In this document: in pieces, positions 1,692-13,150 of the stretch
How the letters are laid out: each line of letters opens with the position of its first letter
Numbering within the stretch: position 1 is the stretch's first letter
Sequence record: LR756500.1
Length of the DNA stretch: 64,000 bases
Strand: one strand, 5' to 3'
Notes under the pieces: generated by a model
The model's database searches: none
What the model was told of the DNA's origin: nothing
Seen by the model: only the letters and a program-made list of their open reading frames with translations
Position numbers and translations under genes: made by a program

Positions 1692-1764
1692 AAAATTTTA
1701 AATTTATTATTTTATGGAAAATTAATATTTTGTTTAAATAAAATTTAATTAATTTAATCTTTAT

Positions 1765-1862
1765 TTCAACATTAAATATTTTTTTAATTTTTTTAACATT
1801 GATTGTCCTAAGGCATTCATATTTAATTAATTATATATTATTATTTATATATTTATGTTAGC
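1765..1862 (+). repeat. 98-bp inverted repeat copy A; candidate attI-like site ending in GTTAGC
   Basis: Reverse complement matches 13029-13126 at 96/98 positions; ends at the first cassette core site. Confidence 0.85.
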
Positions 1863-1869
1863 AACAATA

Positions 1870-2238
1870 CTACAAACCGTACTTCGATTTAAGTTTTTCT
1901 AATTGCTCCAACTCAATCTTTTTAATTCTTTCCTTTTCTTGTCTATCTCGTTCATCTTGTCTTTTTTGGTATTCAATTTCTTCTTGTTCACACGCTTGTT
2001 TGTATTCATTTTCAGAAATTAGACCCAAATCAACAAGTGGATGGTCGGTATTATCTTTACTATATTGGTTTATATTCACTTCATTTTTTGTGTATCCAAA
2101 TCCTTCTGTAATATCATTAACAACCAATACTGTAAATGTGTTATCTGTAAATTTTAACCATAAATCGCCACAATCTAATTTCAAATCAGAGATTGTTTTT
2201 CCTTTCAATTCATTGATATTCTGTATTTCATTTTTCAT
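1870..2238 (-). CDS. cassette 1 hypothetical protein
   Basis: ORF track; flanked by gttagcaacaatac / gtactgttgctaac. Confidence 0.75.
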   Translation of the reverse strand: MKNEIQNINELKGKTISDLKLDCGDLWLKFTDNTFTVLVVNDITEGFGYTKNEVNINQYSKDNTDHPLVDLGLISENEYKQACEQEEIEYQKRQDERDRQEKERIKKIELEQLEKLKSKYGL

Positions 2239-2272
2239 ATTATATAAATTAATCGTTTATAATCCGTACTGT

Positions 2273-2380
2273 TGCTAACACATTGTATATGTCGGTTTTG
2301 CCAATTGGCTTTTGTGCTTTTGTGCTTTGACTGAGAGTATGTGCGTGGCAAAACCGAACACATACAACCATTCGTTATAA
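2273..2380 (+). other. attC-like site S1
   Basis: TGCTAAC..GTTATAA; stem tgtatatgtcggttttgcca / tggcaaaaccgaacacataca with bulged bases. Confidence 0.8.
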
Positions 2381-2395
2381 GTAATAAAATAAAAA

Positions 2396-2560
2396 CTACT
2401 TACTACTATTAATATCCTTAATCAAAATTTGAATTTCTTCATTTTTATTTTCTAACTCTTTTTCAAATGCTTTTTGAAACTCAAACTTTTGTTCTTCACT
2501 TAACTCATTCAAATTTTGAATGTTAGTTTGTCTAATTTCTGCTTTAATTTTCTTTTCCAT
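2396..2560 (-). CDS. 54-aa cassette protein (MEKKIKAEIRQ...), absent from ORF track
   Basis: Translated by hand; fills the cassette between S1 and S2. Confidence 0.65.
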   Translation of the reverse strand: MEKKIKAEIRQTNIQNLNELSEEQKFEFQKAFEKELENKNEEIQILIKDINSSK

Positions 2561-2586
2561 AATTTTACTGTTTTTATTTTACATAC

Positions 2587-2708
2587 TTATAACAACAAAT
2601 ATAAAACATTGCTGATGTAGTTTCTATTTATATTATACGTTTAATTTCAAGTTTTGTTTCATTTATTTACATTCATGTTGCAACTTTTTATATTTGTAAT
2701 CGTTATAG
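2587..2708 (+). other. attC-like site S2
   Basis: TTATAAC..GTTATAG; stem acaaatataaaa..ttgc / gcaac..tttttatatttgt. Confidence 0.8.
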
Positions 2709-2717
2709 ATAATAAAA

Positions 2718-2936
2718 TTAAAAATAGTCATGACTATCTATAAATAACTCCTTATATGTTTCATCAGTAAAAGAAAATCCTCTACCATCAACCGTCATTT
2801 CTACAACTTGCATCACTTTTAAGTAATTAATTATTGTGTCAAGTTCGTCTTCTAATTCTTTACCTATTTTAAACATACTCATAGCTGCCATTATCTCACC
2901 AAGTCTTTCAATATTTTCTTTTACTTTCTCATCCAT
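2718..2936 (-). CDS. cassette hypothetical protein
   Basis: ORF track; bounded by gttatagata / tatctataac. Confidence 0.7.
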   Translation of the reverse strand: MDEKVKENIERLGEIMAAMSMFKIGKELEDELDTIINYLKVMQVVEMTVDGRGFSFTDETYKELFIDSHDYF

Positions 2937-2964
2937 ATTAATTAGTATTTTTAATTTTACATAT

Positions 2965-3049
2965 CTATAACAACAAATATAAGAAATAAATCTTACTTTG
3001 TCTATTTTTTAATGAAAAGATTTACTTCTCATATTTGCAACCGTTAGGC
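2965..3049 (+). other. attC-like site S3
   Basis: CTATAAC..GTTAGGC; stem caaatataagaaataaatc / gatttacttctcatatttg. Confidence 0.8.
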
Positions 3050-3053
3050 ATAA

Positions 3054-3245
3054 TTATACTCTACCACTAAGGTAGTATTCTATTTCACTCTTACTAAAAT
3101 CATCGGGCTTGTTTTTATAGTACTCCCTTAATTTTCCTTCGTGAACACCTTGTTCAAATGCCCATTTCATATCATCTAATGAATAACTACGCCTAACAAA
3201 GTATAAACGTAATGTTTTCAGTTTTTCAATCAATCTTTTTATCAT
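3054..3245 (-). CDS. cassette protein starting inside the S4 loop
   Basis: ORF track; LYFVRRS is encoded by the att arm. Confidence 0.7.
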   Translation of the reverse strand: MIKRLIEKLKTLRLYFVRRSYSLDDMKWAFEQGVHEGKLREYYKNKPDDFSKSEIEYYLSGRV

Positions 3246-3310
3246 ATTATTAAATTTTGTATTTCAAATTAAGTTCAGTTAAACACTACGTTTATACTCA
3301 ACTGTTATGG
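3191..3310 (+). other. attC-like site S4
   Basis: GCCTAAC..GTTATGG; stem agtataaacgta / tacgtttatact. Confidence 0.8.
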
Positions 3311-3311
3311 T

Positions 3312-3485
3312 TCATGCTAATCGCACAATTTGACGTTCATCTACTTGTGAAAAACAATTTTCATTATATGGTTGTCCATCGTACCAAAATGAACTACAGT
3401 CCCATCTCGCAACATTCCATCCTTCGTAACTAAAATTATTAGGGCTAAATAAGTATACCCAATAGTAACCTTCTTTTCTTTCCAT
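3312..3485 (-). CDS. 57-aa Trp-rich cassette protein (MERKEGYYWV...)
   Basis: Translated by hand; preferred over the overlapping track ORF 3341-3628. Confidence 0.65.
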   Translation of the reverse strand: MERKEGYYWVYLFSPNNFSYEGWNVARWDCSSFWYDGQPYNENCFSQVDERQIVRLA

Positions 3486-3531
3486 TTTATTTTTATTTTA
3501 AGTTTAACAATCTGATTAATAAAGCACGAAA

Positions 3532-3624
3532 CCATAACATTTGCTATATGTAACACGGCTGAAAAGTCCGTACTATTTTGAGAATGTCTGCTATGCCGTG
3601 CTACACATATCATTTTCGTTATGA
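3532..3624 (+). other. attC-like site S5
   Basis: CCATAAC..GTTATGA; stem tatgtaacacggc / gccgtgctacacata. Confidence 0.8.
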
Positions 3625-3810
3625 ACAATGCTTAACGTCTGCCAACGCTATGTCATGTCCACATTTTTTACATTTACCAACCATAATTAAGTGGTCGAAA
3701 GCATTGTTCATAACACCAAATAAATGAAATTTCTCTATTTCATCTATTGTCGGTAGTGCTTTTATTGTTACTTCTATACCACTTGGCAATTTTACTTTCA
3801 TATTTTTCAT
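3619..3810 (-). CDS. cassette protein reading through S6; CKKC motif
   Basis: ORF track; stop is the TAA of the core site; start uncertain. Confidence 0.45.
   Translation of the reverse strand: MKNMKVKLPSGIEVTIKALPTIDEIEKFHLFGVMNNAFDHLIMVGKCKKCGHDIALADVKHCS
3708..3758 (+). other. short degenerate attC-like site S6 (GTT changed to GGT)
   Basis: TCATAAC; stem taaatgaaat / atttcatcta; GGTAGTG. Confidence 0.55.
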
Positions 3811-3919
3811 AGTCTATACCCATAGAACAAACCTTTCGCTTCGCAACACTAACATCAGATATATTCAATTTTTTATTTGTATTATCCAAAGTTTCTTCTA
3901 AAATTTTACTCTTTTCCAT
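3740..3919 (-). CDS. 59-aa cassette protein (MEKSKILEETLDNTNKKLNISDVSVA...)
   Basis: Translated by hand; starts in the S7 loop. Confidence 0.65.
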   Translation of the reverse strand: MEKSKILEETLDNTNKKLNISDVSVAKRKVCSMGIDYEKYESKIAKWYRSNNKSTTDNR

Positions 3920-3964
3920 TTTATTAAATTTTGTGTTAGAACTACGTATATGTAATCATTATAG
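3847..3964 (+). other. degenerate attC-like site S7 (GTT changed to ATT)
   Basis: CACTAAC..ATTATAG; weak arm pairing. Confidence 0.55.
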
Positions 3965-3968
3965 CCAA

Positions 3969-4319
3969 TTAAAGCACTGAATCATAATTGCTGCCTCTAT
4001 CATCATAATCCCATTTAGAATCAAGCTCATAATATTCTTTTTTTGATTGTTGGTATTCGATTCCTTTTTGCAATTCTTTAATTTGAGAATTAAGTTTATC
4101 TATTTTATTTTGCCTTTGCTCTGAAATGTATTTTTGTGCATCATTAACTGTTTTGAAAAATTTGTCGGAAGTCATAGATAAGCATATTCTCCAATTATAC
4201 TCCGTACCAGCACTACGCAAAGACCTGACAAATGCGTAACTATCGGTTAATTTGACGCAATCTCTTTCCCATATTCTAACTAAATCATCCTTTACAATAT
4301 AAACTTTAAAAAACTCCAT
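3969..4319 (-). CDS. cassette hypothetical protein
   Basis: ORF track; between S7 and S8. Confidence 0.7.
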   Translation of the reverse strand: MEFFKVYIVKDDLVRIWERDCVKLTDSYAFVRSLRSAGTEYNWRICLSMTSDKFFKTVNDAQKYISEQRQNKIDKLNSQIKELQKGIEYQQSKKEYYELDSKWDYDDRGSNYDSVL

Positions 4320-4337
4320 ATCTATAAAATTAACTGA

Positions 4338-4467
4338 CTATAACCCGTGGTATGGTTAGTTGCCGTGTTAGTACTAAATTTAAGCGTTACTACCCGCTTG
4401 TAATTTTCTGTAATTTGATAGGAAAGTAGCCCGCAATCGGCAACTAACCATACAACCAACGTTATGA
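4338..4467 (+). other. attC-like site S8
   Basis: CTATAAC..GTTATGA; perfect 16-bp stem gtatggttagttgccg / cggcaactaaccatac. Confidence 0.85.
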
Positions 4468-4473
4468 TTAATT

Positions 4474-4653
4474 TTACTCAACCACTTCAAAGTCACCAAC
4501 ATTAATTGGGTGATATACACCCAACCCCTGACATATTGTAAATGTTCCATCTTCATTAAATCCTTGATATGGCTCATCCTCTTCAAATATATCACCACTT
4601 TTAAATGTTGTCATATACCCCTCATAATCTTTTAGTAATTTAATTTTTTTCAT
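4474..4653 (-). CDS. 59-aa cassette protein (MKKIKLLKDYEGY...)
   Basis: Translated by hand; preferred over the track ORF 4380-4598. Confidence 0.65.
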   Translation of the reverse strand: MKKIKLLKDYEGYMTTFKSGDIFEEDEPYQGFNEDGTFTICQGLGVYHPINVGDFEVVE

Positions 4654-4679
4654 ATTTTAATATTTAAGTAAAAAACTAA

Positions 4680-4773
4680 CCATAACAAGGTGTATAAAAC
4701 ATAACCTAATTACAAATTTTAAATTAACCACGGAACTATAATAGGTTATGTTTCATACACCTAACCGTTAGCG
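4680..4773 (+). other. attC-like site S9
   Basis: CCATAAC..GTTAGCG; stem aggtgtataaaacataaccta / taggttatgtttcatacacct. Confidence 0.85.
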
Positions 4774-4990
4774 GTAATTTAATAACAGTATTTTGAGCAT
4801 CTTCATAGCTTTCAAATATCTTATTACATCTTGGACAAGAACAACAACCGTCAACAACGGGTATAGCAAATAATTTTACTAAGTCAAATCGTAATTTTCC
4901 ACATATTTCTCCTGTCATTTTTATATAATCAAGATTATCGTTATCAATTTTTACATCACTTAATAATAAGTGTACTTCTTGTTCTGTCAT
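4736..4990 (-). CDS. cassette protein spanning the S10 arm and ending inside S9
   Basis: ORF track; FAIPVVDG and LPLTVRC are encoded by att arms. Confidence 0.6.
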   Translation of the reverse strand: MTEQEVHLLLSDVKIDNDNLDYIKMTGEICGKLRFDLVKLFAIPVVDGCCSCPRCNKIFESYEDAQNTVIKLPLTVRCMKHNLL

Positions 4991-5053
4991 ATTTATAAAT
5001 TTATTAGTTATTACTATTAATTCCGAACTGAGTATATCTGAGTGTCGTTATAT
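4849..5053 (+). other. degenerate long attC-like site S10
   Basis: CGTCAAC (degenerate)..GTTATAT. Confidence 0.45.
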
Positions 5054-5063
5054 GCAATAAAAA

Positions 5064-5198
5064 TTATTTTTTGGATATTTTATATAACATTATAAATCCT
5101 ATTAAAAAGTGATGGATGTTGTACAATTTGCCATTTCTATCAACTTCGCTACAAAAATATCCAAATCCTATTACAAATGGCAAAATCTTTATATTCAT
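5064..5198 (-). CDS. 44-aa cassette protein (MNIKILPFVIG...)
   Basis: Translated by hand; between S10 and S11. Confidence 0.5.
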   Translation of the reverse strand: MNIKILPFVIGFGYFCSEVDRNGKLYNIHHFLIGFIMLYKISKK

Positions 5199-5210
5199 AA
5201 TTTTTACAGT

Positions 5211-5340
5211 TTATAACAACAAATATAAGCAATTATTTTCATTACTTCCAAAATAAATGTTGTTTGTTAATATTAATTTTGTTCTTTTAATTAAGTTTCT
5301 ACTAATTTTACTCAAATGTATATACCTGCAGACGTTAGCT
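5211..5340 (+). other. hybrid attC-like site S11
   Basis: TTATAAC..GTTAGCT; left arm of S2/S3 type, right arm of S15 type. Confidence 0.65.
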
Positions 5341-5345
5341 GCCAT

Positions 5346-5537
5346 TTAAGGAAGCTCTGTAATAACATAGTTAATAGCCATGTTTATTTCTGTTTCAATT
5401 TTAAATCTATACCCATTAAGCTCATAAACATTTTCATCTTTCATTTTTTCTAAACTAAACTTTTGCAATAGTTCATAAATCTGCGAAAGTGTAAGATTAT
5501 TCACGTTGGCTTTTATGTTTAAGTTTATTGTCATCAT
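5346..5537 (-). CDS. cassette hypothetical protein
   Basis: ORF track; bounded by gttagctgccattt / aaatggtagctaac. Confidence 0.7.
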   Translation of the reverse strand: MMTINLNIKANVNNLTLSQIYELLQKFSLEKMKDENVYELNGYRFKIETEINMAINYVITELP

Positions 5538-5550
5538 AATAAAAAATGGT

Positions 5551-5636
5551 AGCTAACATGATATATAAGCCATACAATGTTAAGGTTTATACTAATTTGA
5601 TAGTGTCGGGTATGACTTATATACCCATTGTTAGAG
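5551..5636 (+). other. attC-like site S12
   Basis: AGCTAAC..GTTAGAG; stem tatataagccatac / gtatgacttatata. Confidence 0.8.
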
Positions 5637-5640
5637 TGCA

Positions 5641-5835
5641 TTATCTAAACACTCCTAAAAAATCTTTTAAGCAACTTTCGTTACATACGTAAAATATTTT
5701 ATTTCCCTTAAAATAACATTCTGGCACTTTCATTGCTTTATGCTTTTTAATTTGTTTTTTACAACTTTCACAATTAACGCACTCTAACAAAGTATTAGCG
5801 TTATTGCCTTTCTTGCTTTCTGATAAGTTTTCCAC
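5641..5835 (-). CDS. Cys-rich cassette protein starting in the S13 loop
   Basis: ORF track; NANTLLECV arm motif; CxxC..CxxxC. Confidence 0.65.
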   Translation of the reverse strand: MENLSESKKGNNANTLLECVNCESCKKQIKKHKAMKVPECYFKGNKIFYVCNESCLKDFLGVFR

Positions 5836-5902
5836 ATTTTATATTTTAATGTTGTTAATAATTGTTTGTGATTGCGTTAACTCCAATACTCGACCATTAG
5901 GT
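5782..5902 (+). other. degenerate attC-like site S13 (ATT core)
   Basis: CTCTAAC..ATTAGGT. Confidence 0.6.
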
Positions 5903-6091
5903 TCAATCATTAATTTGTTTTGAATCTTCTATCATATTTTTGATTCGTTCTTTGAATCTATGTTCGTATTCCTTATCAACTTCACCCAAGTCAGTTGTTT
6001 CAAGATATTTTTTAGGTAATCCTTTACCCATAGTTTCCTTGAGTTTATTTTGAAAATACTCAAGTTCTTCGTTTGTGTTTTTATTTTCCAT
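5903..6091 (-). CDS. cassette hypothetical protein
   Basis: ORF track; ATG start; between S13 and S14. Confidence 0.65.
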   Translation of the reverse strand: MENKNTNEELEYFQNKLKETMGKGLPKKYLETTDLGEVDKEYEHRFKERIKNMIEDSKQIND

Positions 6092-6133
6092 ATTTTATAT
6101 TTTTTTACAAAGGTAAAACAAATTAATGACAAA

Positions 6134-6187
6134 ACCTAACAAATGATAAACAACATTAAAACATTCGTTTATCTGCAACCGTTATAA
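6134..6187 (+). other. minimal 54-bp attC-like site S14
   Basis: ACCTAAC..GTTATAA; stem gataaac / gtttatc. Confidence 0.7.
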
Positions 6188-6197
6188 AACAGTTTGC

Positions 6198-6344
6198 TTA
6201 AAAAAGTTTTCCACATTTTATACATCTAACCAAATAAGCACCAACCTCAAACTTTTCAAATTCGTGTTTGCAAACAGATTTTATAACAGGTATATCCAAT
6301 TGCTTTTTTTGTTTTCTAAATAAACATTTTCACAATTTTTTCAT
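6198..6344 (-). pseudogene. cassette ORF with in-frame TGA at codon 5 (MKKL*KCLFRKQKKQLDIPVIKSVCKHEF...CIKCG)
   Basis: Translated by hand; TGA at 6330-6332. Confidence 0.5.
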
Positions 6345-6404
6345 CTTGTATTTCAATTTAATTTTTACTAATTTTACGCAACTATATACCTGCAGCCTTT
6401 ATAG
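6281..6404 (+). other. attC-like site S15 (TTT core)
   Basis: TTATAAC..TTTATAG; stem aggtatat..attgc / gcaactatatacct. Confidence 0.65.
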
Positions 6405-6605
6405 TGCATTAAGGAAGTCCTCAGCATCCTTCACACTAAAGCATTTTGTGAATTTACCTGTATTTTCATTCAACACTATTACAAAATCAACTGCTCCGTA
6501 ATTAAATGCCAATTTAGTTGCTTCAATATCAAACACACATAAAGCATTATACTTTGGTATTACGGGTTGACAATCTGAATATTTTTTATCTAAAATTCTT
6601 AACAT
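6399..6605 (-). CDS. cassette hypothetical protein
   Basis: ORF track; between S15 and S16. Confidence 0.65.
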   Translation of the reverse strand: MLRILDKKYSDCQPVIPKYNALCVFDIEATKLAFNYGAVDFVIVLNENTGKFTKCFSVKDAEDFLNAL

Positions 6606-6624
6606 AGTTTTAAGTATTAACTTA

Positions 6625-6719
6625 CTATAACAATGTGTATATGTAATGCAGCCAATAAGTTAATTGTAAATTGAAAGTATATGCAAGACAAACCGACATC
6701 ATACCGCCAGCCATTATAG
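6625..6719 (+). other. hybrid/degenerate attC-like site S16 (ATT core)
   Basis: CTATAAC..ATTATAG; right arm resembles S1. Confidence 0.55.
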
Positions 6720-6723
6720 CCAA

Positions 6724-6882
6724 TTAAAAAGTAACACCATTATCATATCCAACCTCTATTGATATATTTTCAATTTCAGTATTTAATATTTGTGCTATCT
6801 TTTCTTTTAGTTCGATTATCTTGGTTACATCAATCATTACATCTTTGTAAACAGAAATTGAAATTAGTTCTTTTTCATTCAT
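6724..6882 (-). CDS. 52-aa cassette protein (MNEKELISISVYKD...)
   Basis: Translated by hand. Confidence 0.55.
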   Translation of the reverse strand: MNEKELISISVYKDVMIDVTKIIELKEKIAQILNTEIENISIEVGYDNGVTF

Positions 6883-6931
6883 ATTATCTAAGCAAACATT
6901 CTCATATACTTAACCATTATAGATAATGAAA

Positions 6932-7222
6932 TTAAATATCCTTAAAAAGTCTTCTTGGTGCTACTAATCTTCTACCATCATCACATTTAATAATATATTC
7001 ACCATCAGGTTCTATAACAGTATCTAAAACATTATAAATATTACCAACTGTTATTGGAAAATTTGGGTTTGGATTTTCCGTACATAGAACTTGTTTAAGC
7101 ATAAACTTATTATTAAATGTTCCATAAATATCTGAATTAACTATTTTAATTTCACTATCTATAGCATCAGATATATGTAATTTTTCATCTTTTTTCATAA
7201 TACTATTTTTATTAGTTAACAA
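6932..7222 (-). CDS. distal cassette protein (KLHISDAIDS arm motif)
   Basis: ORF track; bounded by attatagata / tatctatagc; likely start near 7198. Confidence 0.65.
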   Translation of the reverse strand: MLTNKNSIMKKDEKLHISDAIDSEIKIVNSDIYGTFNNKFMLKQVLCTENPNPNFPITVGNIYNVLDTVIEPDGEYIIKCDDGRRLVAPRRLFKDI

Positions 7223-7228
7223 AACAAC

Positions 7229-7642
7229 TTAATACGCCTTGTTATGTTTGTACGCCCTTGTTTGATTATAGAGCATTTTCAATTCGATATGCTTTTCAAT
7301 ATCAATGTTTCTTTGTCCTATAAAATCGAGCAATCTAATAAATACGTCTGCAATTTCATCTTCAAAAGTATCCTTTACCTGAGTTCTGAAAATTTCCTCA
7401 AACTTTATCATATCGTTTTCTTTTGCTGCCAAATCTAAATCTTCTCGAATAGTTTTGCCGTCAATAATAAATTCAGCATCATCAATTTTGGCATATTGTC
7501 CTTTTCTATCAGCTTCCAAAGCCTCAGATAATTCAGAAACCATAAGCATTAATAAAGTACCTGTTTCTCTTGGTTCGTCCCAAAAACCCTTTGCCTTTGC
7601 TCTTTCATGAAAATGTTTTGCTAATTCGTTTAAATTATTCAT
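7229..7642 (-). CDS. MazG-like all-alpha NTP pyrophosphohydrolase
   Basis: LMVSELSEALEADR and EDEIADVFIRLLD motifs. Confidence 0.85.
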   Translation of the reverse strand: MNNLNELAKHFHERAKAKGFWDEPRETGTLLMLMVSELSEALEADRKGQYAKIDDAEFIIDGKTIREDLDLAAKENDMIKFEEIFRTQVKDTFEDEIADVFIRLLDFIGQRNIDIEKHIELKMLYNQTRAYKHNKAY

Positions 7643-7664
7643 ATTATTTTATCTTTTAAGTTTT

Positions 7665-8081
7665 TTAAAAATTTATTACAGACAGATCTAAATAATATTG
7701 TGGATCTGCATAGTCTTGAATTTCAGAAACTAATCCATTAAATTTCATTTTAAAATCTCTATTTATATTTATAAGGTAAACAATTCTTCCATGTGGTTTT
7801 ATGGAATACCTATCTCCTTCGATATTTTCAACTGAGCGATTTTGCATTAAAACATATCCACCAATTGTTAATGCAATATCATCAATCATTTTTTCTTTAT
7901 CCCCAATTTCTTCATGCCAAGGTATTGCAACTAAATCTAAATCTCTATTCATTGAGCCATGCACAATAATATTATATCCATATTTTAAACCTATTTCTTT
8001 TATTATTTCAAAGTAAAATGAATATAAATTTGGTTTAGCATGAATTGGTTTAATGTCTGTTATAGGATTTGTTGTATTCAA
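7665..8081 (-). CDS. conserved hypothetical protein, nucleotidyltransferase-like motif
   Basis: VHGSMNRDLDLVAIPW (GS..D.D). Confidence 0.5.
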   Translation of the reverse strand: MNTTNPITDIKPIHAKPNLYSFYFEIIKEIGLKYGYNIIVHGSMNRDLDLVAIPWHEEIGDKEKMIDDIALTIGGYVLMQNRSVENIEGDRYSIKPHGRIVYLININRDFKMKFNGLVSEIQDYADPQYYLDLSVINF

Positions 8082-8175
8082 ATATTTATTAAATAAAATT
8101 TTATTATTAAATTATATAACCAAAATTAATTATGTTTATAATTTAATCAATTTTTATATTTTTAATTTTACATAC

Positions 8176-8209
8176 TTATAACAACTATTTTTACACTTAA
8201 TCGTTAGTA
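8176..8209 (+). other. collapsed attC-like remnant
   Basis: TTATAAC..GTTAGTA with the loop deleted; ttttacatacttataacaac is identical to 2577-2596. Confidence 0.45.
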
Positions 8210-8268
8210 ACAATATAAAAATAAAGTTTGTAGAATAACCGATACAGACTCAATATTATTAAAAGAAT

Positions 8269-8700
8269 TTAAATAAAATCATATTTCATAATTATCTTAT
8301 TATCGATTTCTTTAACAACAGTCCATCCCATTTTTAAATGATATTCTTTTGCAAAAACTGTATCTAAAAATATAGTTTTATATCCTAATAATTTTGCATA
8401 TTCAAATCTTTTTTCAGTTAACATCAATCCATATCCATTACCTCTATATTCTGGTTCAACCCATAACAATAAATTCCAGGGAGATATAGTCCTATCTATT
8501 TCATTAATAGTATCAAATAATCCACAACCTATAGGTTTATCATCTATTATCAATACATAACAAACTGAATCAGATTCATTATTTAAATACCTTCTAATCT
8601 CACTTAAACTATATTCATCATCAACTTGCCAACGTTCTTTCATAATAGATGAAACATAATTAATATACATGTGAGTTAATTTTTCTATTTTAATTTCCAT
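8269..8700 (-). CDS. GNAT family N-acetyltransferase
   Basis: VEPEYRGNGYG acetyl-CoA motif; GYKTIFLDT; YHLKMGW. Confidence 0.85.
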   Translation of the reverse strand: MEIKIEKLTHMYINYVSSIMKERWQVDDEYSLSEIRRYLNNESDSVCYVLIIDDKPIGCGLFDTINEIDRTISPWNLLLWVEPEYRGNGYGLMLTEKRFEYAKLLGYKTIFLDTVFAKEYHLKMGWTVVKEIDNKIIMKYDFI

Positions 8701-10121
8701 TCAAATTTATAATTGCCTGTTCCAAAACATCTATANNNNNNNNNNNNNNNNNNNNNNNNNNNNNNNNNNNNNNNNNNNNNNNNNNNNNNNNNNNNNNNNN
8801 NNNNNNNNNNNNNNNNNNNNNNNNNNNNNNNNNNNNNNNNNNNNNNNNNNNNNNNNNNNNNNNNNNNNNNNNNNNNNNNNNNNNNNNNNNNNNNNNNNNN
8901 NNNNNNNNNNNNNNNNNNNNNNNNNNNNNNNNNNNNNNNNNNNNNNNNNNNNNNNNNNNNNNNNNNNNNNNNNNNNNNNNNNNNNNNNNNNNNNNNGGCT
9001 CCACCAACAACCGAAGTATTTAATTTATTAGCAAACCGTAAAAGCTCCCATTCATTTTCTTTAGCAACTTGATTTAAATTTTTACGTAAGGATCCGAAGG
9101 TCATTAATGATACTAACTCACCTTCATAATATAAACCTAATTTAATAGCAGCATTAGTATTGCCCTGTAAATGGTTCCTATTTAAAAATTCTCTACTATC
9201 ACCAGAATTAACGGTTTTAATTACACATTTTCTAGCATACACTTTATCAGTAGATAAATTTAATAAATTCTTTATTCTTGATTTTACTATATCTCTTTTG
9301 TTATACCAAACATCTTCCCATATATGTATTAAATTAATTCCCAATTCTTTGCATCTATTACTTTTATCTATATGATATTCTTTAGGTTTATTAAATTCAT
9401 TATGCCAATATACTCCATTATGTTCAAATGCTATATTTTTATCTTCAATATAAATATCAAGTTCTCTATTTTTTAATTCTTTTTTAGAATTAATTCTAAA
9501 TGGTTTTAAATAAATGTCTTTTATCCAATCTATTAATTCTATTTCAGAATTACTTTTTCCGTGATTAGGATTACATTTTAAACATGGATTAATATTTATA
9601 TTTATTCTTCTATATAATAATTGAGAATCTATTATTGATATACTTTTACATTCAACACATTCTATTTTTATTTTTTGTTGATCATCCCATTCTATTATTT
9701 TAATTTTATCTTTTAATTTTTCTTTAGCAAAAGGAAAATAATATTTATCTTTAAAATAATTTGATTGTGTTATATGTTGTACTCCATATCTTTTTAGAAC
9801 TGTTATTCTTGTTCTTTTTTCTTTTAAAACTATTGCACATTTTCTACTACAGCTAGAAGAATAACCAGGCATTATACCCATAAATTTAGATGAAGGTATT
9901 TTATTACCACATACTTCACATTTTGGAATTTCAGTTTTATCATGTAATGCATGATAAAGTTTTTCTTTAAAAGACGTTAATTTTAGATTATTATTTATAG
10001 AATATTTTTCTATTTCTAATAATAGATTAGGATAATTATTTTTAAAAAATTCAATTCTAGTAGTACTAGATGTAAGTTTTCCGTTTTTTATTAATATTTT
10101 ATTTAAATCATTTGATAACAT
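8685..10121 (-). CDS. Hef/Vsr-like endonuclease with Zn ribbons and a C-terminal Mom-like GNAT domain (87 codons of N)
   Basis: ELDIYI..IAFEHNGVYWH; LIHIWED; YARKC; NHLQG; WELLRFANKLNTSVVGGA. Confidence 0.7.
   Translation of the reverse strand: MLSNDLNKILIKNGKLTSSTTRIEFFKNNYPNLLLEIEKYSINNNLKLTSFKEKLYHALHDKTEIPKCEVCGNKIPSSKFMGIMPGYSSSCSRKCAIVLKEKRTRITVLKRYGVQHITQSNYFKDKYYFPFAKEKLKDKIKIIEWDDQQKIKIECVECKSISIIDSQLLYRRINININPCLKCNPNHGKSNSEIELIDWIKDIYLKPFRINSKKELKNRELDIYIEDKNIAFEHNGVYWHNEFNKPKEYHIDKSNRCKELGINLIHIWEDVWYNKRDIVKSRIKNLLNLSTDKVYARKCVIKTVNSGDSREFLNRNHLQGNTNAAIKLGLYYEGELVSLMTFGSLRKNLNQVAKENEWELLRFANKLNTSVVGGAXXXXXXXXXXXXXXXXXXXXXXXXXXXXXXXXXXXXXXXXXXXXXXXXXXXXXXXXXXXXXXXXXXXXXXXXXXXXXXXXXXXXXXXYRCFGTGNYKFEWKLK
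8736..8996. other. assembly gap or masked sequence, 261 N
   Basis: Run of N; the length preserves the reading frame. Confidence 0.95.
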
Positions 10122-10159
10122 TTAATTATATGGTTAATTATTATTATGTTTAATAAAAT

Positions 10160-11038
10160 TTAAACATAATCACCTTCCTGTATTTCAGGTAACTCTCCCA
10201 TCTTATTTCTATACAATAATGTAATCATCGGTAAATTTACCCATCTTAAATCCTTCTCAACTAATTGATTTTTAATACGTTCAAGAATGTCCCTGTCACT
10301 TCCCCGAGGTTCGCTGCGTACTGGTGAAGTAAGAAATTGCTCTCTTACATTTCTATATCTTAAATCCTTAAATTCCTTCAAATCCCAACAAAATGTTGAA
10401 TGCCAACTTTCTGTTATATGAGAAATATTATTCCCCCCTATATGTTTAACAACTCCTCTTTCTGGTCTACAATATGTATCTGTTCCTGTTTTATATCTTT
10501 TTATTATAGCTGTCGAAGAAAAGAATTTTGCTTTAGGATATCTAGTTATTGCCTTAGCCATATATTCTAGATGGTTAGGAAGCCATATATCATCGTGATC
10601 TAAACGACAAATAAAATTTACACCATCCCTTACTGCTTTATCAATAGCTATATTTGCAGCAACATCAGACCCTGAATGCCAAAGATCTGCCCCCCTGAAT
10701 CGGATCCTTTCACCTGGCAGTTCCAGATTTTCATATACGATTTTTGAGTATTCGAATGATTCAACTAAAGGCTTGATTTCATTATCACTTTCATAGTCAT
10801 CACCCATTAGATAAATTTTGTAGTTTTGGTATGATTGGTTTTTGATAGATTGAAGAGCTTCTTGTAATCTCATAGGAGTAGTACCATCGCTTCTTTTATA
10901 GGTAGCAACTATAATACCAAATCTTATATTTGTTCTGTGTTCTATTTTTTTGAATTTATCTATTTTATCCGATAAATCATTTTGTTTATTTTGATCTTCT
11001 TGATTAAAATTTTGAAAATTTTCTAATAAGGTGTCCAT
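10160..11038 (-). CDS. glycosyltransferase family 2
   Basis: IIVATY, SIKNQSYQNYKI, LDHDDIWLPNHLE (DxD). Confidence 0.88.
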   Translation of the reverse strand: MDTLLENFQNFNQEDQNKQNDLSDKIDKFKKIEHRTNIRFGIIVATYKRSDGTTPMRLQEALQSIKNQSYQNYKIYLMGDDYESDNEIKPLVESFEYSKIVYENLELPGERIRFRGADLWHSGSDVAANIAIDKAVRDGVNFICRLDHDDIWLPNHLEYMAKAITRYPKAKFFSSTAIIKRYKTGTDTYCRPERGVVKHIGGNNISHITESWHSTFCWDLKEFKDLRYRNVREQFLTSPVRSEPRGSDRDILERIKNQLVEKDLRWVNLPMITLLYRNKMGELPEIQEGDYV

Positions 11039-11054
11039 AAAAATATTATTTGAA

Positions 11055-11063
11055 TATATATTT
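11055..11063 (-). promoter_or_regulatory. candidate late promoter AAATATATA
   Basis: Same motif lies upstream of genes with head-targeting-like N-termini. Confidence 0.45.
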
Positions 11064-11082
11064 GGAATTTTAATTTTATTTT

Positions 11083-11102
11083 AAACTTTTTTATTATATT
11101 TA
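11083..11102 (+). promoter_or_regulatory. candidate early promoter (..TTATTATATTTA) driving the right cassette array
   Basis: Recurrent motif seen more than 15 times upstream of plus-strand operons. Confidence 0.6.
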
Positions 11103-11202
11103 AATTTAATAATATTTAGTTATATGAATCAAAATTTAAAAATATTAATAAAATGAGAACAATAAAGGCACAGAAGACTTAATTACTGGTATAATTATTG
11201 AA

Positions 11203-11358
11203 ATGAAAAACGAAGACAACTTTGAAAGAAAAGCTGCACAGCGAATAATCGAAGCACTAACAGATGAAAATAATTTGAATATACCCCCAGTTATCGTTTC
11301 AATTTGCGATGGTCTTTTGTTTGAATGTACTGATAGAGAAACAATACATAACGAATGA
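11203..11358 (+). CDS. 51-aa protein with arm motif NLNIPPVIVS
   Basis: Translated by hand; half att site GTTATCG at 11290. Confidence 0.5.
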   Translation: MKNEDNFERKAAQRIIEALTDENNLNIPPVIVSICDGLLFECTDRETIHNE

Positions 11359-11479
11359 TGCGTTTATTCTCGTTGCCGTATTAGGAGCAGAAATTATTAA
11401 CCATAAAATAAACACAATATGAAAAAAGGAACTTCAAATAAGCAGAAAGCAGGCAATAGAATTAAACGCAATGTTATAA
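11346..11479 (-). other. attC-like site R1
   Basis: ACATAACG..GTTATAA; stem tgcgtttattctcgttgcc / ggcaatagaattaaacgca. Confidence 0.8.
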
Positions 11480-11646
11480 AATTGTTGCCCGACCGGAGAA
11501 TTTATGATGAATACACATTTATAATTGGAAGTATGCAACACGGAACATCCTACATGGGTAAATCGGACGAAACTATAAAACACCACGACAATATAATCGC
11601 ATGGCTTAAAAAACGTAGAGAGGAGTTTAAGGGCAATGTTTTATAA
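11419..11646 (+). CDS. cassette protein starting in the R1 loop
   Basis: ORF track; stop is the TAA of the R2 core. Confidence 0.7.
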   Translation: MKKGTSNKQKAGNRIKRNVIKLLPDRRIYDEYTFIIGSMQHGTSYMGKSDETIKHHDNIIAWLKKRREEFKGNVL

Positions 11647-11773
11647 CGGACGGCGGTTGGCTTTCGTTGCCGATGCTCGATTAACGACAAATGATTATTA
11701 ATAGTAAAAATTTAAAATTATGCAGACAGATTCTAAAAACCAAATAGGCAATGAAGCTAATACCATGTTATGT
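11641..11773 (-). other. attC-like site R2
   Basis: TTATAACG..GTTATGT; stem ttggctttcgttgcc / ggcaatgaagctaa. Confidence 0.75.
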
Positions 11774-11947
11774 GAAGTGTATTTTGTAAAAAAAGGTAAA
11801 AAGTTTATGAAAGGACATGGATATAGCACATTAAAAGGATATAAATTTAGTTGGACTTTCAATAAAAACGAAGCAAGAAAAATGGAATATAGCACAGCAA
11901 ATAGTTTAGCAATTTCAAGCGGTGGTGTATTGAAACAACAACTATAA
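11720..11947 (+). CDS. cassette protein starting in the R2 loop
   Basis: ORF track; GNEANTMLCEV arm motif. Confidence 0.7.
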   Translation: MQTDSKNQIGNEANTMLCEVYFVKKGKKFMKGHGYSTLKGYKFSWTFNKNEARKMEYSTANSLAISSGGVLKQQL

Positions 11948-11994
11948 ATGGTCAATTAGTAGAAATTCCACGCTACGACCCTCTTTATTATTGT

Positions 11995-12109
11995 GGCTAA
12001 CGGTTGCAAATATAAAACGTTGCAACATGAATGTAATTAAATGAAACAAAACTTGAAAAAATGCTCGAATAACCACGGATGCCCAACTGTTTTATACCAT
12101 ATGTTAGCG
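11995..12109 (-). other. attC-like site R3
   Basis: GGCTAACG..GTTAGCG; first ~60 bp nearly identical to the reverse complement of the S2 right half. Confidence 0.75.
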
Positions 12110-12145
12110 GTAGTGATTTTTTAACTTATTAATATTTAACGATTT

Positions 12146-13033
12146 ATGAAAACAAAAAGATTTGATAGTTCAGAAGGTAATGTTTGGAAATATGTATTTG
12201 ACTTTGAAAATGCAGTTGCCGAAGCGGTACTTTACAAATATGAAAACTTTTACAAAAGGACTGTACTTTGCGTGAGTGTGCAAAGTGGATGCCCTGTTGG
12301 TTGCAAATTTTGCGGAACTGGCAAAAAGTTTATTAGAAACCTTACAAACTTAGAAATAGTTGCACAGGTTAAACATTGCTTAAAAGACATGAATATTGAA
12401 AATGTTAATTCGGCTAGTGATCGTTTCCAAATAATGTTTATGAGTATGGGTGAACCTACTTTAAATATTGATAATGTAATAACGGCAATAAAGGATTTAA
12501 ACAACTTATATCCAAATGCTGAATTACTTATTTCAACTATGGGGGCAAAAAACAATACCGCTTTTGAAAAACTGTTAAAAGTAAGTATTGAAATACAAAA
12601 GGTTGGTTTGCAATTTTCAGTACATGAAGCATTTGAAGAAAAAAGAAACCAATTAATATCATTTAAAAATAAATTGAATTTACGTGAAATGCGTGATTTT
12701 GGCATTGAGTGGAATAGGCAAACAAAACGCCCTGTATATGTGAATTATTGCATTGGAGAAACAAACCAAAGCAATGAAGAGATGGATAGGCTTAAAGACT
12801 TATTTAGCCCTGCTCTTTTCAATTTTACATTTTCGGTTATTTGCTCTTCTGATGAAAACATGAAAGATAAAGGATATAGAGAACTGAACAAGATAAACAC
12901 AATTACTTCATCATTTGTTGAATGTGGTTATAATGTTCGAGTTTTCGACCCTGCTGGTCAAGATGATATTGGGGGCGGGTGCGGACAATTATGGTATGTA
13001 CAAAACTGGATGCGTGACCATCATTACCGCTAA
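12146..13033 (+). CDS. rlmN: RlmN/Cfr-family radical SAM RNA methyltransferase, short form, cassette-borne
   Basis: LCVSVQSGCPVGCKFC, MSMGEP, QFSVH, DIGGGCGQL. Confidence 0.85.
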   Translation: MKTKRFDSSEGNVWKYVFDFENAVAEAVLYKYENFYKRTVLCVSVQSGCPVGCKFCGTGKKFIRNLTNLEIVAQVKHCLKDMNIENVNSASDRFQIMFMSMGEPTLNIDNVITAIKDLNNLYPNAELLISTMGAKNNTAFEKLLKVSIEIQKVGLQFSVHEAFEEKRNQLISFKNKLNLREMRDFGIEWNRQTKRPVYVNYCIGETNQSNEEMDRLKDLFSPALFNFTFSVICSSDENMKDKGYRELNKINTITSSFVECGYNVRVFDPAGQDDIGGGCGQLWYVQNWMRDHHYR

Positions 13034-13126
13034 CATAAATATATAAATAATAATATATAATTAATTAAATATGAATGCCTTAGGACAATCAATGTTAATA
13101 AAATTTAAAAAATATTTAATGTTGAA
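13029..13126 (-). repeat. 98-bp inverted repeat copy B; candidate attI-like site
   Basis: 96/98 match to the reverse complement of 1765-1862. Confidence 0.85.
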
Positions 13127-13150
13127 AAATTATTTAATTTTATAAAATAA

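What the first reader, a model, noticed from the sequence alone, without database searches (positions are those of the whole stretch)
3054..12109. Cassette genes start inside the att hairpin loop, so the recombination arm is also coding
Seen: several ORFs start in the loop and read through the arm and core site, giving recurrent peptides: LYFVRRS (S4), KLNISDVS (S7), FAIPVVDG (S10), NANTLLECV (S13), LDIPVIK (S15), KLHISDAID (7159), RIKRNVIK (R1) and EANTMLCEV (R2). Stops often coincide with the core TAA (3619, 11646, 13033). With the polarity set by the attI-like repeats, each loop belongs to the same cassette as its gene body, which independently supports that polarity. Inference: the DNA has dual use, and the hairpin may gate translation or allow N-terminal fusions.
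Basis: partly seen in the sequence, partly recalled or inferred. Interest (0 to 1): 0.7.

Follow-up and report, generated by a model that had tools for sequence, protein, structure and literature searches.

The report
Phage gene cassettes with coding hairpins
A 462-kb phage carries an integron-like island of about 21 mobile gene cassettes in which each recombination hairpin sits in front of its own gene, and in several cassettes the gene really does start inside the hairpin, so the same DNA serves as recombination site and as protein code.

Summary
Window 1743-13148 is an integron-type cassette island in the huge phage LR756500.1. It holds two arrays. Each array ends at one copy of a 120-nt inverted repeat, which is an attI-like site plus the 5' stump of a lost Xer/IntI-like integrase gene.

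Cassette borders lie at G|TTA. This follows from identical cassettes in different neighbourhoods: the S4 family in 6 contexts, the S13 family in 4, and soil and wetland contigs that begin matching exactly at 6917. That is the reverse of related bacterial arrays in Flavobacteriaceae.

Eight of 21 cassettes have an ORF that starts in the loop.
- Three are supported by homologues. For S4 (3054-3245) the N-terminus is conserved in 9 proteins, two of them without a hairpin, and 7 of 18 stem pairs show compensatory changes. The other two are S13 (5641-5835) and 7159 (6932-7198).
- Three are untested: S10, R1 and R2.
- Two are doubtful: S7 and S15.

In 216 hairpins from other viral arrays, loop starts are enriched in gene frames (odds ratio 2.5, p = 1e-5).

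Translational gating is untested. N-terminal fusion by cassette shuffling is not expected with this polarity. No recombinase is encoded in this phage.

The parts
1743..1862 (.). IR-L: attI-like site with core GTTAGC at 1857-1862 and crossover G1857|T1858, plus a stump of an integrase gene on the minus strand (ATG about 1820, 19 codons)
   Evidence: Inverted repeat of IR-R, inner 68 nt perfect. Resembles the integrase-proximal junctions of viral arrays.
13029..13148 (.). IR-R: inverted copy of IR-L. Core GCTAAC at 13029-13034, then 36 nt, then the integrase stump ORF at 13071-13145 (+, 24 codons).
1858..2374 (-). Cassette C1: gene 1870-2238, hairpin H1 2276-2377. The start lies 37 nt outside the hairpin.
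   Evidence: Left core TTGCTAAC matches the IR-L core 8 of 8. The gene is 71% identical in nucleotides to Cellulophaga phage phi18:3 gp030, which has no hairpin.
2375..2702 (-). Cassette C2: gene 2396-2560, hairpin H2 2590-2705. Start outside the hairpin.
2703..3043 (-). Cassette C3: gene 2718-2936, hairpin H3 2968-3046. Start outside the hairpin.
3044..3304 (-). Cassette C4 (S4): gene 3054-3245, ATG 3245 in the loop of hairpin H4 3194-3307. Codons about 9-19 form the arm and the core GTTAGGCG (3190-3197).
   Evidence: 9 homologues with a conserved N-terminus. 6 cassette contexts, with 7 of 18 stem pairs compensatory. Contigs from other samples end at 3307.
3305..3618 (-). Cassette C5: gene 3312-3485, hairpin H5 3535-3621. 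Start outside the hairpin.
3619..3958 (-). Cassette C6 (S7): gene 3619-3810, whose stop is the core TAA, and an overlapping loop-start ORF 3740-3919. Hairpin H6 3850-3961 has weak arms.
   Evidence: The loop ORF is doubtful.
3959..4461 (-). Cassette C7: gene 3969-4319, hairpin H7 4341-4464.
4462..4767 (-). Cassette C8: gene 4474-4653, hairpin H8 4683-4770. The hairpin is of the same type as bacterial and viral GTGTATGA...CATACAC sites.
4768..5047 (-). Cassette C9 (S10): ORF 4736-4990 starts within the weak hairpin H9 4852-5050. A Cys-rich motif follows directly after the core. The 3' end runs 32 nt across the border into C8.
   Evidence: No homologues found.
5048..5334 (-). Cassette C10: ORF 5064-5198 and the chimeric hairpin H10 5214-5337, whose arms do not pair.
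5335..5630 (-). Cassette C11: gene 5346-5537, hairpin H11 5554-5633.
5631..5896 (-). Cassette C12 (S13): zinc-ribbon gene 5641-5835, GTG start in the loop of hairpin H12 5785-5899. The first CxxC begins 2 codons after the core.
   Evidence: Homologues P0002-P0004. The same cassette occurs in 4 contexts, with homology bounded by the cores.
5897..6181 (-). Cassette C13: gene 5903-6091 and the short hairpin H13 6137-6184.
6182..6398 (-). Cassette C14 (S15): frame from ATG 6350 broken by TGA at 6338-6336. Hairpin H14 6284-6401.
6399..6713 (-). Cassette C15: gene 6399-6605 (stop on the core TTA), hairpin H15 6628-6716.
6714..6916 (-). Cassette C16: gene 6724-6882 and the hairpin remnant H16 6890-6919.
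6917..7241 (-). Cassette C17 (7159): gene 6932-7198, ATG in the loop of hairpin H17 7162-7244.
   Evidence: P0006 and P0009 share the N-terminus and the segment after the core. Soil and wetland contigs begin matching exactly at 6917.
7242..8203 (-). Distal unit with two genes (7229-7642 and 7665-8081) and the hairpin remnant H18 8179-8206.
8269..11038 (-). Central low-GC genes without hairpins: GNAT 8269-8700, endonuclease-like ORF 8685-10121 (holds the N gap 8736-8996), glycosyltransferase 10160-11038.
11203..11351 (+). Truncated distal cassette of the right array. Gene 11203-11358 ends 7 nt beyond the border.
11352..11646 (+). Cassette CR3 (R1): gene 11419-11646, ATG in the loop of hairpin HR1 11349-11476. 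The stop is the last 3 nt of the cassette.
   Evidence: No homologues found.
11647..12000 (+). Cassette CR2 (R2): gene 11720-11947, ATG in the loop of hairpin HR2 11644-11770. An alternative ATG at 11765 overlaps the core.
   Evidence: No homologues found.
12001..13033 (+). Cassette CR1: radical-SAM gene 12146-13033 (stop on the core TAA), hairpin HR3 11998-12106. The start lies 39 nt outside the hairpin.

Best explanation
Window 1743-13148 is an integron-type gene-cassette island in a 462-kb phage (LR756500.1, from a groundwater metagenome). The host is probably a member of Bacteroidota.

Two arrays, about 18 and 4 cassettes long, each run up to one copy of an inverted repeat. The repeat consists of an attI-like site (TAAC followed by an AT-rich TATATATA box) and the first 19-24 codons of a lost Xer/IntI-like tyrosine recombinase gene. 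The phage now encodes no such enzyme, so any current exchange would need a recombinase from the host or from a co-infecting phage (inferred).

Each cassette runs from TTAxxx to the next G and ends in an 80-125-nt imperfect hairpin. On the top strand the hairpin reads xxxTAAC-N2-stem-loop-stem-N5-G|TTA. Exchange happens at G|TTA (shown by comparing contexts). In bacterial relatives the gene lies on the top strand, with the hairpin behind it. In this phage and in many other viral arrays the gene lies on the bottom strand. The hairpin is then the 5' leader of its own gene, and the better-folding bottom strand has the same sequence as the mRNA.

In roughly a quarter to a third of cassettes the start codon sits in the loop. 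The first 13-20 codons then run through the inner arm and the core GTTAxxx, so those bases are constrained both by base pairing and by the protein. This is shown for S4, and for S13 and 7159 it is shown from homologues. Every cassette ends, in gene sense, with TAA, which acts as a built-in stop. Effects of the hairpin on translation are possible but not shown.
For: Hairpins and cores:
- define them.
- The left core of each site matches the right core of the preceding site (mean 6.5 of 8, and 8 of 8 in seven cases) better than its own right core (4.7 of 8).

Polarity:
- In Tamlana locus L235 a duplicated cassette next to the recombinase shows the unit to be body plus hairpin, ending at G|TT on the long-spacer side.
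- S13 cassettes in the window, L103, L237 and L238 share the sequence from the C after the upstream TAA|C to ...CTCTAA|C, and differ outside it.
- S4 cassettes occur in six neighbourhoods with the same borders.
- Contigs from other samples start at 6917 and end at 3307.
- The bottom strand folds better in 14 of 16 hairpins.

Coding through the arm:
- The S4 N-terminus is conserved in 9 proteins, including L241 and L242, which have no hairpin.
- In the S4 hairpin alignment 97.7% of cells are paired, 7 of 18 stem pairs show changes on both sides, and 0 of 500 shuffles reach the observed values.
- The first CxxC of S13 begins 2 codons after the core in all homologues.
- For 7159, the segment after the core is conserved in P0006 and P0009.

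Generality:
- Between viral hairpins the gene lies on the bottom strand in 120 intervals and on the top strand in 13. In bacterial loci the count is 15 top and 1 bottom.
- Loop starts are enriched in gene frames, odds ratio 2.5.

attI and the integrase stump.

No recombinase in the phage.
Against: - No recombination has been observed. Activity and strand choice are inferred from sequence comparison.
- The related recombinases score below NCBI's integron-integrase cut-offs (153-199 bits against 265) and do not match profile positions 180-239.
- The unpaired spacer sits next to the crossover core and not near L'' as in classical attC. I could not run the standard attC model.
- Several hairpins are weak, chimeric or remnants (H6, H9, H10, H13, H16, H18), so parts of the island may be a fossil.
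- About half of loop-start ORFs are expected by chance. R1, R2 and S10 lack homologues. S7 and S15 are probably not genuine.
- No RNA or protein data exist.
Confidence: 0.8

Rival explanations
1. Classical integron polarity: each hairpin belongs to the gene upstream of it and the crossover lies between hairpin and downstream gene. ORFs that start in a loop would then cross a cassette border and be chance extensions or context-dependent fusions.
For: - The gene-sense strand reads gene, short gap, TAAC hairpin GTTA, 16-46 nt, ATG, as in ordinary arrays.
- The longer arm lies where classical extrahelical bases would put the bottom strand.
- The gene-proximal core is the better conserved one.
- The KLNISDV-type hairpin is joined to unrelated gene bodies, with homology breaking at that core.
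Against: - Identical cassettes in different neighbourhoods keep the upstream hairpin and change the downstream one.
- The bacterial arrays next to the recombinase put the crossover on the long-spacer side.
- The identity between the two inverted repeats ends at G|TTAGC.
- The strand that would be 'top' under this model folds better.
Confidence: 0.05
2. The hairpins are not recombination sites. They would be transcription terminators, RNA regulatory structures or miniature transposable elements between small phage genes, and the loop ORFs would be incidental.
For: - The hairpins sit between nearly all small genes.
- The mRNA strand folds best.
- Some arms carry a promoter-like TATATTTG box (own reading).
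- Related 125-nt elements are dispersed in Flavobacteriaceae genomes and break assemblies.
- No recombinase is encoded in this phage.
Against: - Modules are exchanged with break points exactly at the TAAC and G|TTA cores.
- Each gene is flanked by 8-10-nt complementary cores.
- The arrays abut a Xer/IntI-like recombinase in bacteria and in 12 viral loci.
- No Rfam family matches.
- An RNA role is not excluded, but it would come on top of recombination.
Confidence: 0.07
3. The cassette island is real, but the loop starts are annotation artefacts. True starts would lie at or after the core, and the open frames through the arm would be chance in AT-poor stems.
For: - 26% of non-gene frames also have an open in-hairpin ATG.
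- S7 overlaps a better gene and S15 has a stop.
- S4 and 7159 have internal Met codons downstream of the core, and R2 and L103 394-576 have an ATG at the core.
- Short 7159 homologues (P0007, P0011, P0017) start at the domain.
Against: - The S4 N-terminal 25 residues are as conserved as the rest of the protein, also where no hairpin exists.
- S13 and S10 have no start codon between the core and the first Cys pair in L103 or the window.
- The 7159 segment between the core and the domain is conserved as protein in three members.
- Loop starts are enriched in gene frames.
Confidence: 0.08

Closest known systems
Integron gene cassettes and attC sites (IntI-mediated recombination of the folded bottom strand)
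   Same: - Arrays of small genes, each with an imperfect palindrome bounded by ..AAC and G|TT.. cores.
- Exchange at G|TT.
- The inner core is complementary to the cassette's own first bases.
- Structure is conserved more than sequence.
- The bottom strand folds better.
- An attI site lies next to a tyrosine recombinase in complete versions.
   Different: - The recombinase relatives are Xer-like, fall below the IntI cut-offs and lack a match to the IntI-specific segment.
- The unpaired spacer lies beside the crossover core rather than as extrahelical bases near L''.
- In the phage arrays all genes lie on the bottom strand, so the site precedes its gene.
- Start codons and N-termini lie inside the site.
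Clusters of attC sites lacking an integrase (CALIN) in phage genomes (Qi et al. 2023, PMC9892861)
   Same: attC-like sites without an integrase in virulent phages, including a Polaribacter (Flavobacteriaceae) phage.
   Different: - This island is far larger, about 21 cassettes.
- It is bounded by two attI-like repeats that carry an integrase stump.
- Gene polarity is uniformly inverted.
- Coding overlap is documented.
- Related viral contigs still carry the recombinase.
ORF-11 and ORF-18 in attI1, and short ORFs within attC (reviewed in PMC8876359)
   Same: Translation through an integron recombination site. The attC stem-loops influence translation of neighbouring cassettes.
   Different: Those are short leader ORFs that act by translational coupling and cross the crossover point. 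Here the cassette's own protein begins in its own site, and the residues are conserved as part of the protein.
Promoter-early stem-loop (PeSL) regulatory cassettes in hyperplastic regions of T4-type phages (Arbiol et al. 2010; from my own knowledge, not checked here)
   Same: Small phage genes each preceded by a conserved promoter and stem-loop module, shuffled between genomes.
   Different: PeSLs are thought to act through homologous recombination. They have no TAAC and GTTA cores, no cassette-specific complementary ends and no associated tyrosine recombinase.

Membership tests
Integron cassette array (attC sites) | Imperfect inverted repeats of 50-150 nt with conserved outer cores, ..YAAC at one end and GTTR.. 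at the other | tested here: met
   16 of 18 left cores end in AAC. Right cores begin with GTTA in 13 of 18 and with ATTA or TTTA in the rest. Lengths are 80-124 nt for intact sites.
Integron cassette array (attC sites) | The inner core is complementary to the first bases of its own cassette, that is, to the crossover core of the preceding site | tested here: met
   Mean 6.5 of 8 against the preceding site and 4.7 of 8 against its own partner. Seven are 8 of 8, including IR-L to H1 and IR-R to HR3. This feature alone does not give polarity.
Integron cassette array (attC sites) | Cassettes move as units with exchange at G|TT | tested here: met
   S13 in 4 contexts and S4 in 6 contexts. A duplicated cassette in L235. 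Contigs from other samples with borders at 6916|6917 and at 3304-3307.
Integron cassette array (attC sites) | The bottom strand folds better than the top strand | tested here: met
   14 of 16 hairpins, mean difference -1.5 kcal/mol.
Integron cassette array (attC sites) | Extrahelical bases near L'' on the arm distal to the cleavage site (PMC5027507) | tested here: not met
   The asymmetry is a 5-6-nt unpaired spacer next to the crossover core, against 2 nt on the other side.
Integron cassette array (attC sites) | Recognised by the curated attC covariance model (IntegronFinder or HattCI) | not testable with these tools
   The model is not available here. Rfam has no matching family.
Complete integron | An adjacent integron integrase (IntI) with its specific additional segment | tested here: not met
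   No tyrosine, serine or Y1 recombinase in G001 or LR756500.1. Only a 19-24-codon stump remains. The related bacterial and viral enzymes score 153-199 bits against the 265 cut-off of TIGR02249 and have no match to positions 180-239. Their best family is NF040815, Xer/integron integrase.
Complete integron | An attI site at which the array begins | tested here: inconclusive
   The inverted repeats end at G|TTAGC. They share TAAC plus a TATNATATAT box, and the 36-nt spacing to ATGAAY, with integrase-bearing viral arrays. Function is not tested.
CALIN (cluster of attC sites lacking an integrase) | Two or more attC sites within a few kb with no integrase nearby | tested here: met
   About 21 sites in 11 kb and no recombinase in 462 kb. 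This depends on accepting the sites as attC-like.

The most novel reading that the evidence does not exclude
Large phages of Bacteroidota maintain their own integron-like platforms, made of a Xer/IntI-like recombinase, an attI site and cassette arrays, with a cassette pool built the other way round from the bacterial one. The recombinogenic bottom strand is the mRNA strand, so the attC hairpin serves as 5' leader, possibly as promoter, and often as start codon and N-terminus of the cassette protein. The hairpin arm can overlie pre-existing coding sequence, as in S4, which would bear directly on how cassettes are born.
Probability: 0.5. Interest if true: 0.85.

Novelty: new variant of a known kind. 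Interest (0 to 1): 0.74.

Why it matters
Integron cassettes are normally described as a promoterless gene followed by its recombination site, and the site is treated as non-coding.

Here the order is reversed throughout a phage island and in more than 100 inter-hairpin intervals of other viral contigs. The site overlaps conserved protein-coding sequence, with compensatory changes that keep both the stem and the reading frame.

That gives:
- a clean natural case of DNA under a double constraint;
- a possible link between recombination structure and expression, because the same strand folds as DNA and as mRNA;
- material on the long-open question of how attC sites and cassettes arise;
- evidence that huge phages can own, and can lose, an integron-like gene-capture system related to a little-described platform in Flavobacteriaceae and other Bacteroidota.

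Tried and rejected
- **Core complementarity as proof of polarity.** I first took the match between neighbouring cores as proof of polarity, then saw that it is symmetric and proves nothing on its own.
- **The classical extrahelical-base rule.** It pointed to the opposite polarity. I rejected it after the bacterial arrays beside the recombinase showed that this family has its long spacer on the crossover side.
- **Neighbours of ClpP homologues in 80 viral loci.** No array, no homologue of the inverted repeat and no homologue of any cassette gene.
- **Exact search for the inverted repeat in viral contigs.** No match.
- **Rfam.** Nothing.
- **Recombinase searches in the phage.** Nothing.
- **Homologue searches for R1, S10 and R2.** They returned only the phage's own sequence.
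- **GenBank phages.** No other record holds this hairpin type at blastn sensitivity.
- **RNA evidence.** No RNA run holds the region, so expression and start sites could not be examined.
- **Reading the TGA in S15 as a sense codon.** Considered and dropped, because other cassette genes end in TGA.
- **Literature.** Searches found phage CALINs and ORFs within attI and attC, but no description of inverted phage cassettes or of the Flavobacteriaceae platform. The library is limited, so this does not prove that none exists.

Full report
**What the window is.** The sequence is very AT-rich, 21-25% GC over most of its length, and rises to 27-30% between about 2000 and 13000 apart from a low-GC central stretch. 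It is part of a 462-kb uncultured phage, LR756500.1. It is almost identical to a 429-kb IMG/VR record that I used as G001. The sample of origin is a groundwater metagenome. The surroundings encode ClpP, a sigma factor, radical-SAM enzymes and many unknown proteins.

**The assembly gap.** The gap at 8736-8996 lies inside a large endonuclease-like ORF on the minus strand, 8685-10121. It touches none of the hairpins or ORFs in the finding. Probes on either side map to G001 with the same offset. The stated length of 261 nt (87 codons) is therefore correct and the flanks are in phase. I masked the corresponding stretch in my copy and did not read it. Whether the ORF is unbroken there is unknown.

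**Anatomy of the island.** Between ClpP (1122-1691, minus) and an LRR gene (13151-13801, plus) lies an island bounded by 120-nt inverted repeats, IR-L 1743-1862 and IR-R 13029-13148. Their inner 68 nt are identical, and their inner ends are GTTAGC and GCTAAC. Inside are about 18 small genes on the minus strand (1870 to about 8081), then three larger low-GC genes without hairpins (8269-11038), then four genes on the plus strand (11203-13033). Nearly every small gene is separated from the next by an imperfect palindrome. On the plus strand of the left array it reads xxxTAAC-N2-stem-loop-stem-N5-GTTAxxx, and the right array is the mirror image. In the whole 429-kb record, 7 of the 12 best-scoring hairpins of this kind lie within these few kilobases. 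The 8-mer ending in TAAC at each site is complementary to the 8-mer beginning with GTTA at the preceding site, with a mean of 6.5 of 8 and seven perfect cases, including both repeat-to-array junctions. The match to its own partner is only 4.7 of 8. So every gene body is flanked by short inverted cores, as in integron cassettes.

**Polarity.** That complementarity is symmetric and does not tell which hairpin belongs to which gene. Two models were possible. The classical rule that extrahelical bases mark the distal arm of the bottom strand (PMC5027507) pointed to the ordinary arrangement, gene first and site behind. Three lines of evidence overturned it.

- *Bacterial arrays.* The hairpins belong to a family that is widespread in Bacteroidota, especially Flavobacteriaceae. 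In Pontimicrobium (L234) and Tamlana (L235) such sites form arrays directly downstream of a Xer/IntI-like tyrosine recombinase. In L235 a 551-nt gene-less cassette is duplicated in tandem at the start of the array. The copies begin at G|TTAGGCAC and end with the hairpin, and the second copy is followed by G|TTGCCAG. In this family the unit is therefore body plus hairpin, and the crossover is at the core beside the long spacer. By the same rule the plus strand is the top strand of the window's left array. IR-L supplies the first G|TTA, and each hairpin belongs with the minus-strand gene to its left, that is, upstream of that gene in gene sense.
- *The same cassette in different neighbourhoods.* The S13 cassette (5641-5835) occurs in the window and in three metagenomic contigs. 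Homology starts at the C after the upstream TAA|C, runs through hairpin and gene, and stops at ...CTCTAA|C. Upstream genes and downstream hairpins all differ. L237 and L238 carry identical genes beside different neighbours. The S4 cassette (3054-3245) occurs in six different neighbourhoods with the same borders.
- *Other samples.* Soil and wetland metagenomes hold single cassettes. Two contigs from different studies begin to match exactly at 6917, the first base of cassette C17. Others end at 3307 and continue with unrelated sequence.

In addition, the predicted bottom strand, which is the gene-sense strand, folds better in 14 of 16 hairpins, as is known for attC sites.

**The flanking repeats.** Twelve of 116 viral loci that share the hairpin motif carry a recombinase of 267-270 aa, 35-45% identical to the bacterial ones. 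It lies immediately after the array and points the same way as the cassette genes. Examples are contigs of 208, 311 and 327 kb. In ten of them the last TAAC core is followed by a TATNATATAT box. In L300 and L328 the recombinase ATG follows exactly 36 nt after the core, as ATGAAY. The window's repeats have GCTAAC, a similar box, 36 nt and then ATGAAT. That ATG opens a 24-codon ORF in IR-R and a 19-codon ORF in IR-L. It aligns with the N-terminus of the L358 recombinase, with 12 of 21 residues identical and 0 of 2000 shuffles reaching the score. The repeats are thus attI-like sites with the stump of a deleted recombinase gene, present twice in inverted orientation. Neither G001 nor LR756500.1 encodes a tyrosine, serine or Y1 recombinase. 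How the inverted duplication arose is not explained.

**Do genes start in the loop?** Eight of 21 cassettes have an ORF that begins between the arms. The other thirteen start 16-46 nt beyond the hairpin.

- *S4.* Nine homologues of 62-71 aa share the N-terminal 25 residues as strongly as the rest of the protein (invariant K3, I6, L12, R13, R18, Y21, S22, D25). Two of them lie in contigs with no hairpin: L241, a 155-kb T4-like contig, and L242. So this segment is real protein and the start must lie upstream of the core. In the six cassette copies the hairpin is kept. In their alignment 97.7% of cells are paired, 7 of 18 stem pairs have changes on both sides, no shuffle out of 500 reaches the observed values, and slid controls collapse. 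Some paired changes alter the protein (L, I or Q; F or A) and some are silent. This shows directly that codons about 9-19 are constrained both as stem and core and as protein.
- *S13.* All four homologues keep an open N-terminal extension of 17-19 codons despite insertions and deletions. The residues TLLE across the core are invariant, and the first CxxC of the zinc ribbon starts two codons after the core. L103 has no start codon between the loop and that motif.
- *7159.* The closest relatives, P0006 and P0009, share the leader and a conserved 20-residue segment between the core and the DUF7244 domain. More distant relatives start at the domain.
- *R1, R2 and S10.* No homologues were found. 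S10 resembles S13 in having a Cys cluster straight after the core.
- *S7.* This ORF overlaps the likelier gene 3619-3810.
- *S15.* The frame has an in-frame TGA.

**How general is it?** In viral loci with three or more hairpins, the longest frame between hairpins lies on the bottom strand in 120 intervals and on the top strand in 13. In bacterial genome loci the count is 15 top and 1 bottom. Of 216 viral hairpins, 55 have a loop ATG whose frame runs through the core and 30 or more codons beyond. The mirror-image control gives 10. Frames open beyond the core have an in-hairpin ATG in 56 of 118 cases, against 140 of 530 for other frames (odds ratio 2.5, p = 1.3e-5). The phenomenon is therefore enriched, but perhaps half of individual cases are chance.

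**The 'recurrent peptides'.** KLNISDV and KLHISDA come from related hairpins, as do ANTLLE and ANTMLC. VIK is simply the reading of GTTATAAAA. The KLNISDV-type leader is joined in frame to at least five unrelated gene bodies: window S7 and 7159, L103 394-576, and L182 3205-3417 and 5133-5384. One of the other two frames of that arm is closed by TGA and the other offers an ATG at the core. How one hairpin type comes to precede different genes is open. Homogenisation of sites, or rare exchange at the inner core, are both possible.

**Stops.** With this polarity every cassette ends, in gene sense, with ...TAA. The stops at 3619, 6399, 11646 and 13033 use it. Other genes stop 5-19 nt earlier. Two ORFs, 4736-4990 and 11203-11358, run a few codons across the border.

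**What is inferred rather than shown.**
- That a host or co-infecting phage recombinase acts on these sites.
- That the host is a member of Bacteroidota. The grounds are the hairpin family, the absence of Shine-Dalgarno sequences upstream of the starts (my own reading of the sequence), and the similarity of cassette 1 to Cellulophaga phage phi18:3 gp030.
- That the TATATTTG box in some arms is a promoter.
- Any effect of the hairpin on translation.

**Comparison with what is known.** Phage-borne attC clusters have been reported (PMC9892861). Short ORFs in attI and attC that aid translation are also known (PMC8876359). IntegronFinder surveys report almost no integrons in Bacteroidetes (PMC9024848). 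In this library I found no description of inverted phage cassettes, of sites that encode the N-terminus of their own cassette protein, or of the Flavobacteriaceae platform.

Noticed in passing
window 2690-2705, 3030-3046 and 5214-5233 (gene-sense arms); L103 about 650-670 and 5120-5140: In one hairpin family the gene-proximal arm reads TATATTTG just before the core. This fits the Bacteroidota -7 promoter consensus TAnnTTTG, so these hairpins may carry the promoter of their own gene.
   Followed up: no
window 2568-2609, 2946-2987, 5192-5233, 8157-8198; also 2372-2414, 2700-2742, 6917-6937: Conserved 20-40-nt modules span the cores on both sides and look like 5' and 3' untranslated regions. Contigs from other samples join 2395 to 2571, as if the same untranslated modules framed a different gene.
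   Followed up: partly
window 5214-5337 (H10) compared with 6284-6401 (H14) and 2590-2705 (H2); 11998-12106 (HR3) compared with H2: Chimeric hairpins. H10 has the left half of one family and the right half of another, and its arms no longer pair. HR3 and H2 share only their right 70 nt. This suggests deletions or recombination within loops.
   Followed up: no
L235 11053-12150 (Tamlana sp.): A 551-nt gene-less cassette is duplicated in tandem at the start of a bacterial array. The site just after the recombinase gene is itself a mini-hairpin with TAAC and GTTA cores.
   Followed up: partly
Loci L104-L223 (GTDB genomes): A hairpin element of about 125 nt (TAACGGTTTTGTGTATGA ... TTATACACGTTGTTG) is highly similar across many Flavobacteriaceae genera. 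It often sits at the ends of very short contigs, so it is repeated enough to break assemblies. Related forms occur in Cytophagales, Chitinophagaceae, Ignavibacteria and Bacteroidales.
   Followed up: partly
L182 (5.6-kb contig labelled as a Methanolobus MAG): This contig holds 12-13 hairpins with small genes on the bottom strand, like the viral arrays. It is probably a phage contig binned with an archaeon by mistake.
   Followed up: no
window 1870-2238: Cassette gene 1 is 71% identical in nucleotides to gp030 of the temperate Cellulophaga phage phi18:3. There it lies in the integrase-methylase module and has no hairpin.
   Followed up: yes
window 35715-35779 and 41637-41754; G001 198609-198719: Isolated hairpins with TAAC and GTTA ends occur outside the island. 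Their scores are near the background of shuffled sequence.
   Followed up: no
window 12146-13033, 14352-15500, 49361-50137: Three radical-SAM proteins lie within 40 kb: one as the cassette next to IR-R, one lysine-2,3-aminomutase-like, and one more.
   Followed up: no
window between 40000 and 63000: The window and the IMG/VR record G001 differ by a 94-nt insertion or deletion somewhere in this interval. LR756500.1 is 33 kb longer than G001.
   Followed up: no
L103 2602-2726: One hairpin in this metagenomic array has the opposite orientation to its neighbours. It is followed by about 90 nt without a gene and may be an inverted or empty cassette.
   Followed up: no
A4 columns 36-56 (loop of the S4 hairpins); window about 3252-3272: The loop segment CTTAATTTGAAA.ACAAAA, 25-45 nt upstream of the ATG, is nearly invariant in six cassette copies. 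It may be a promoter or a leader element.
   Followed up: no
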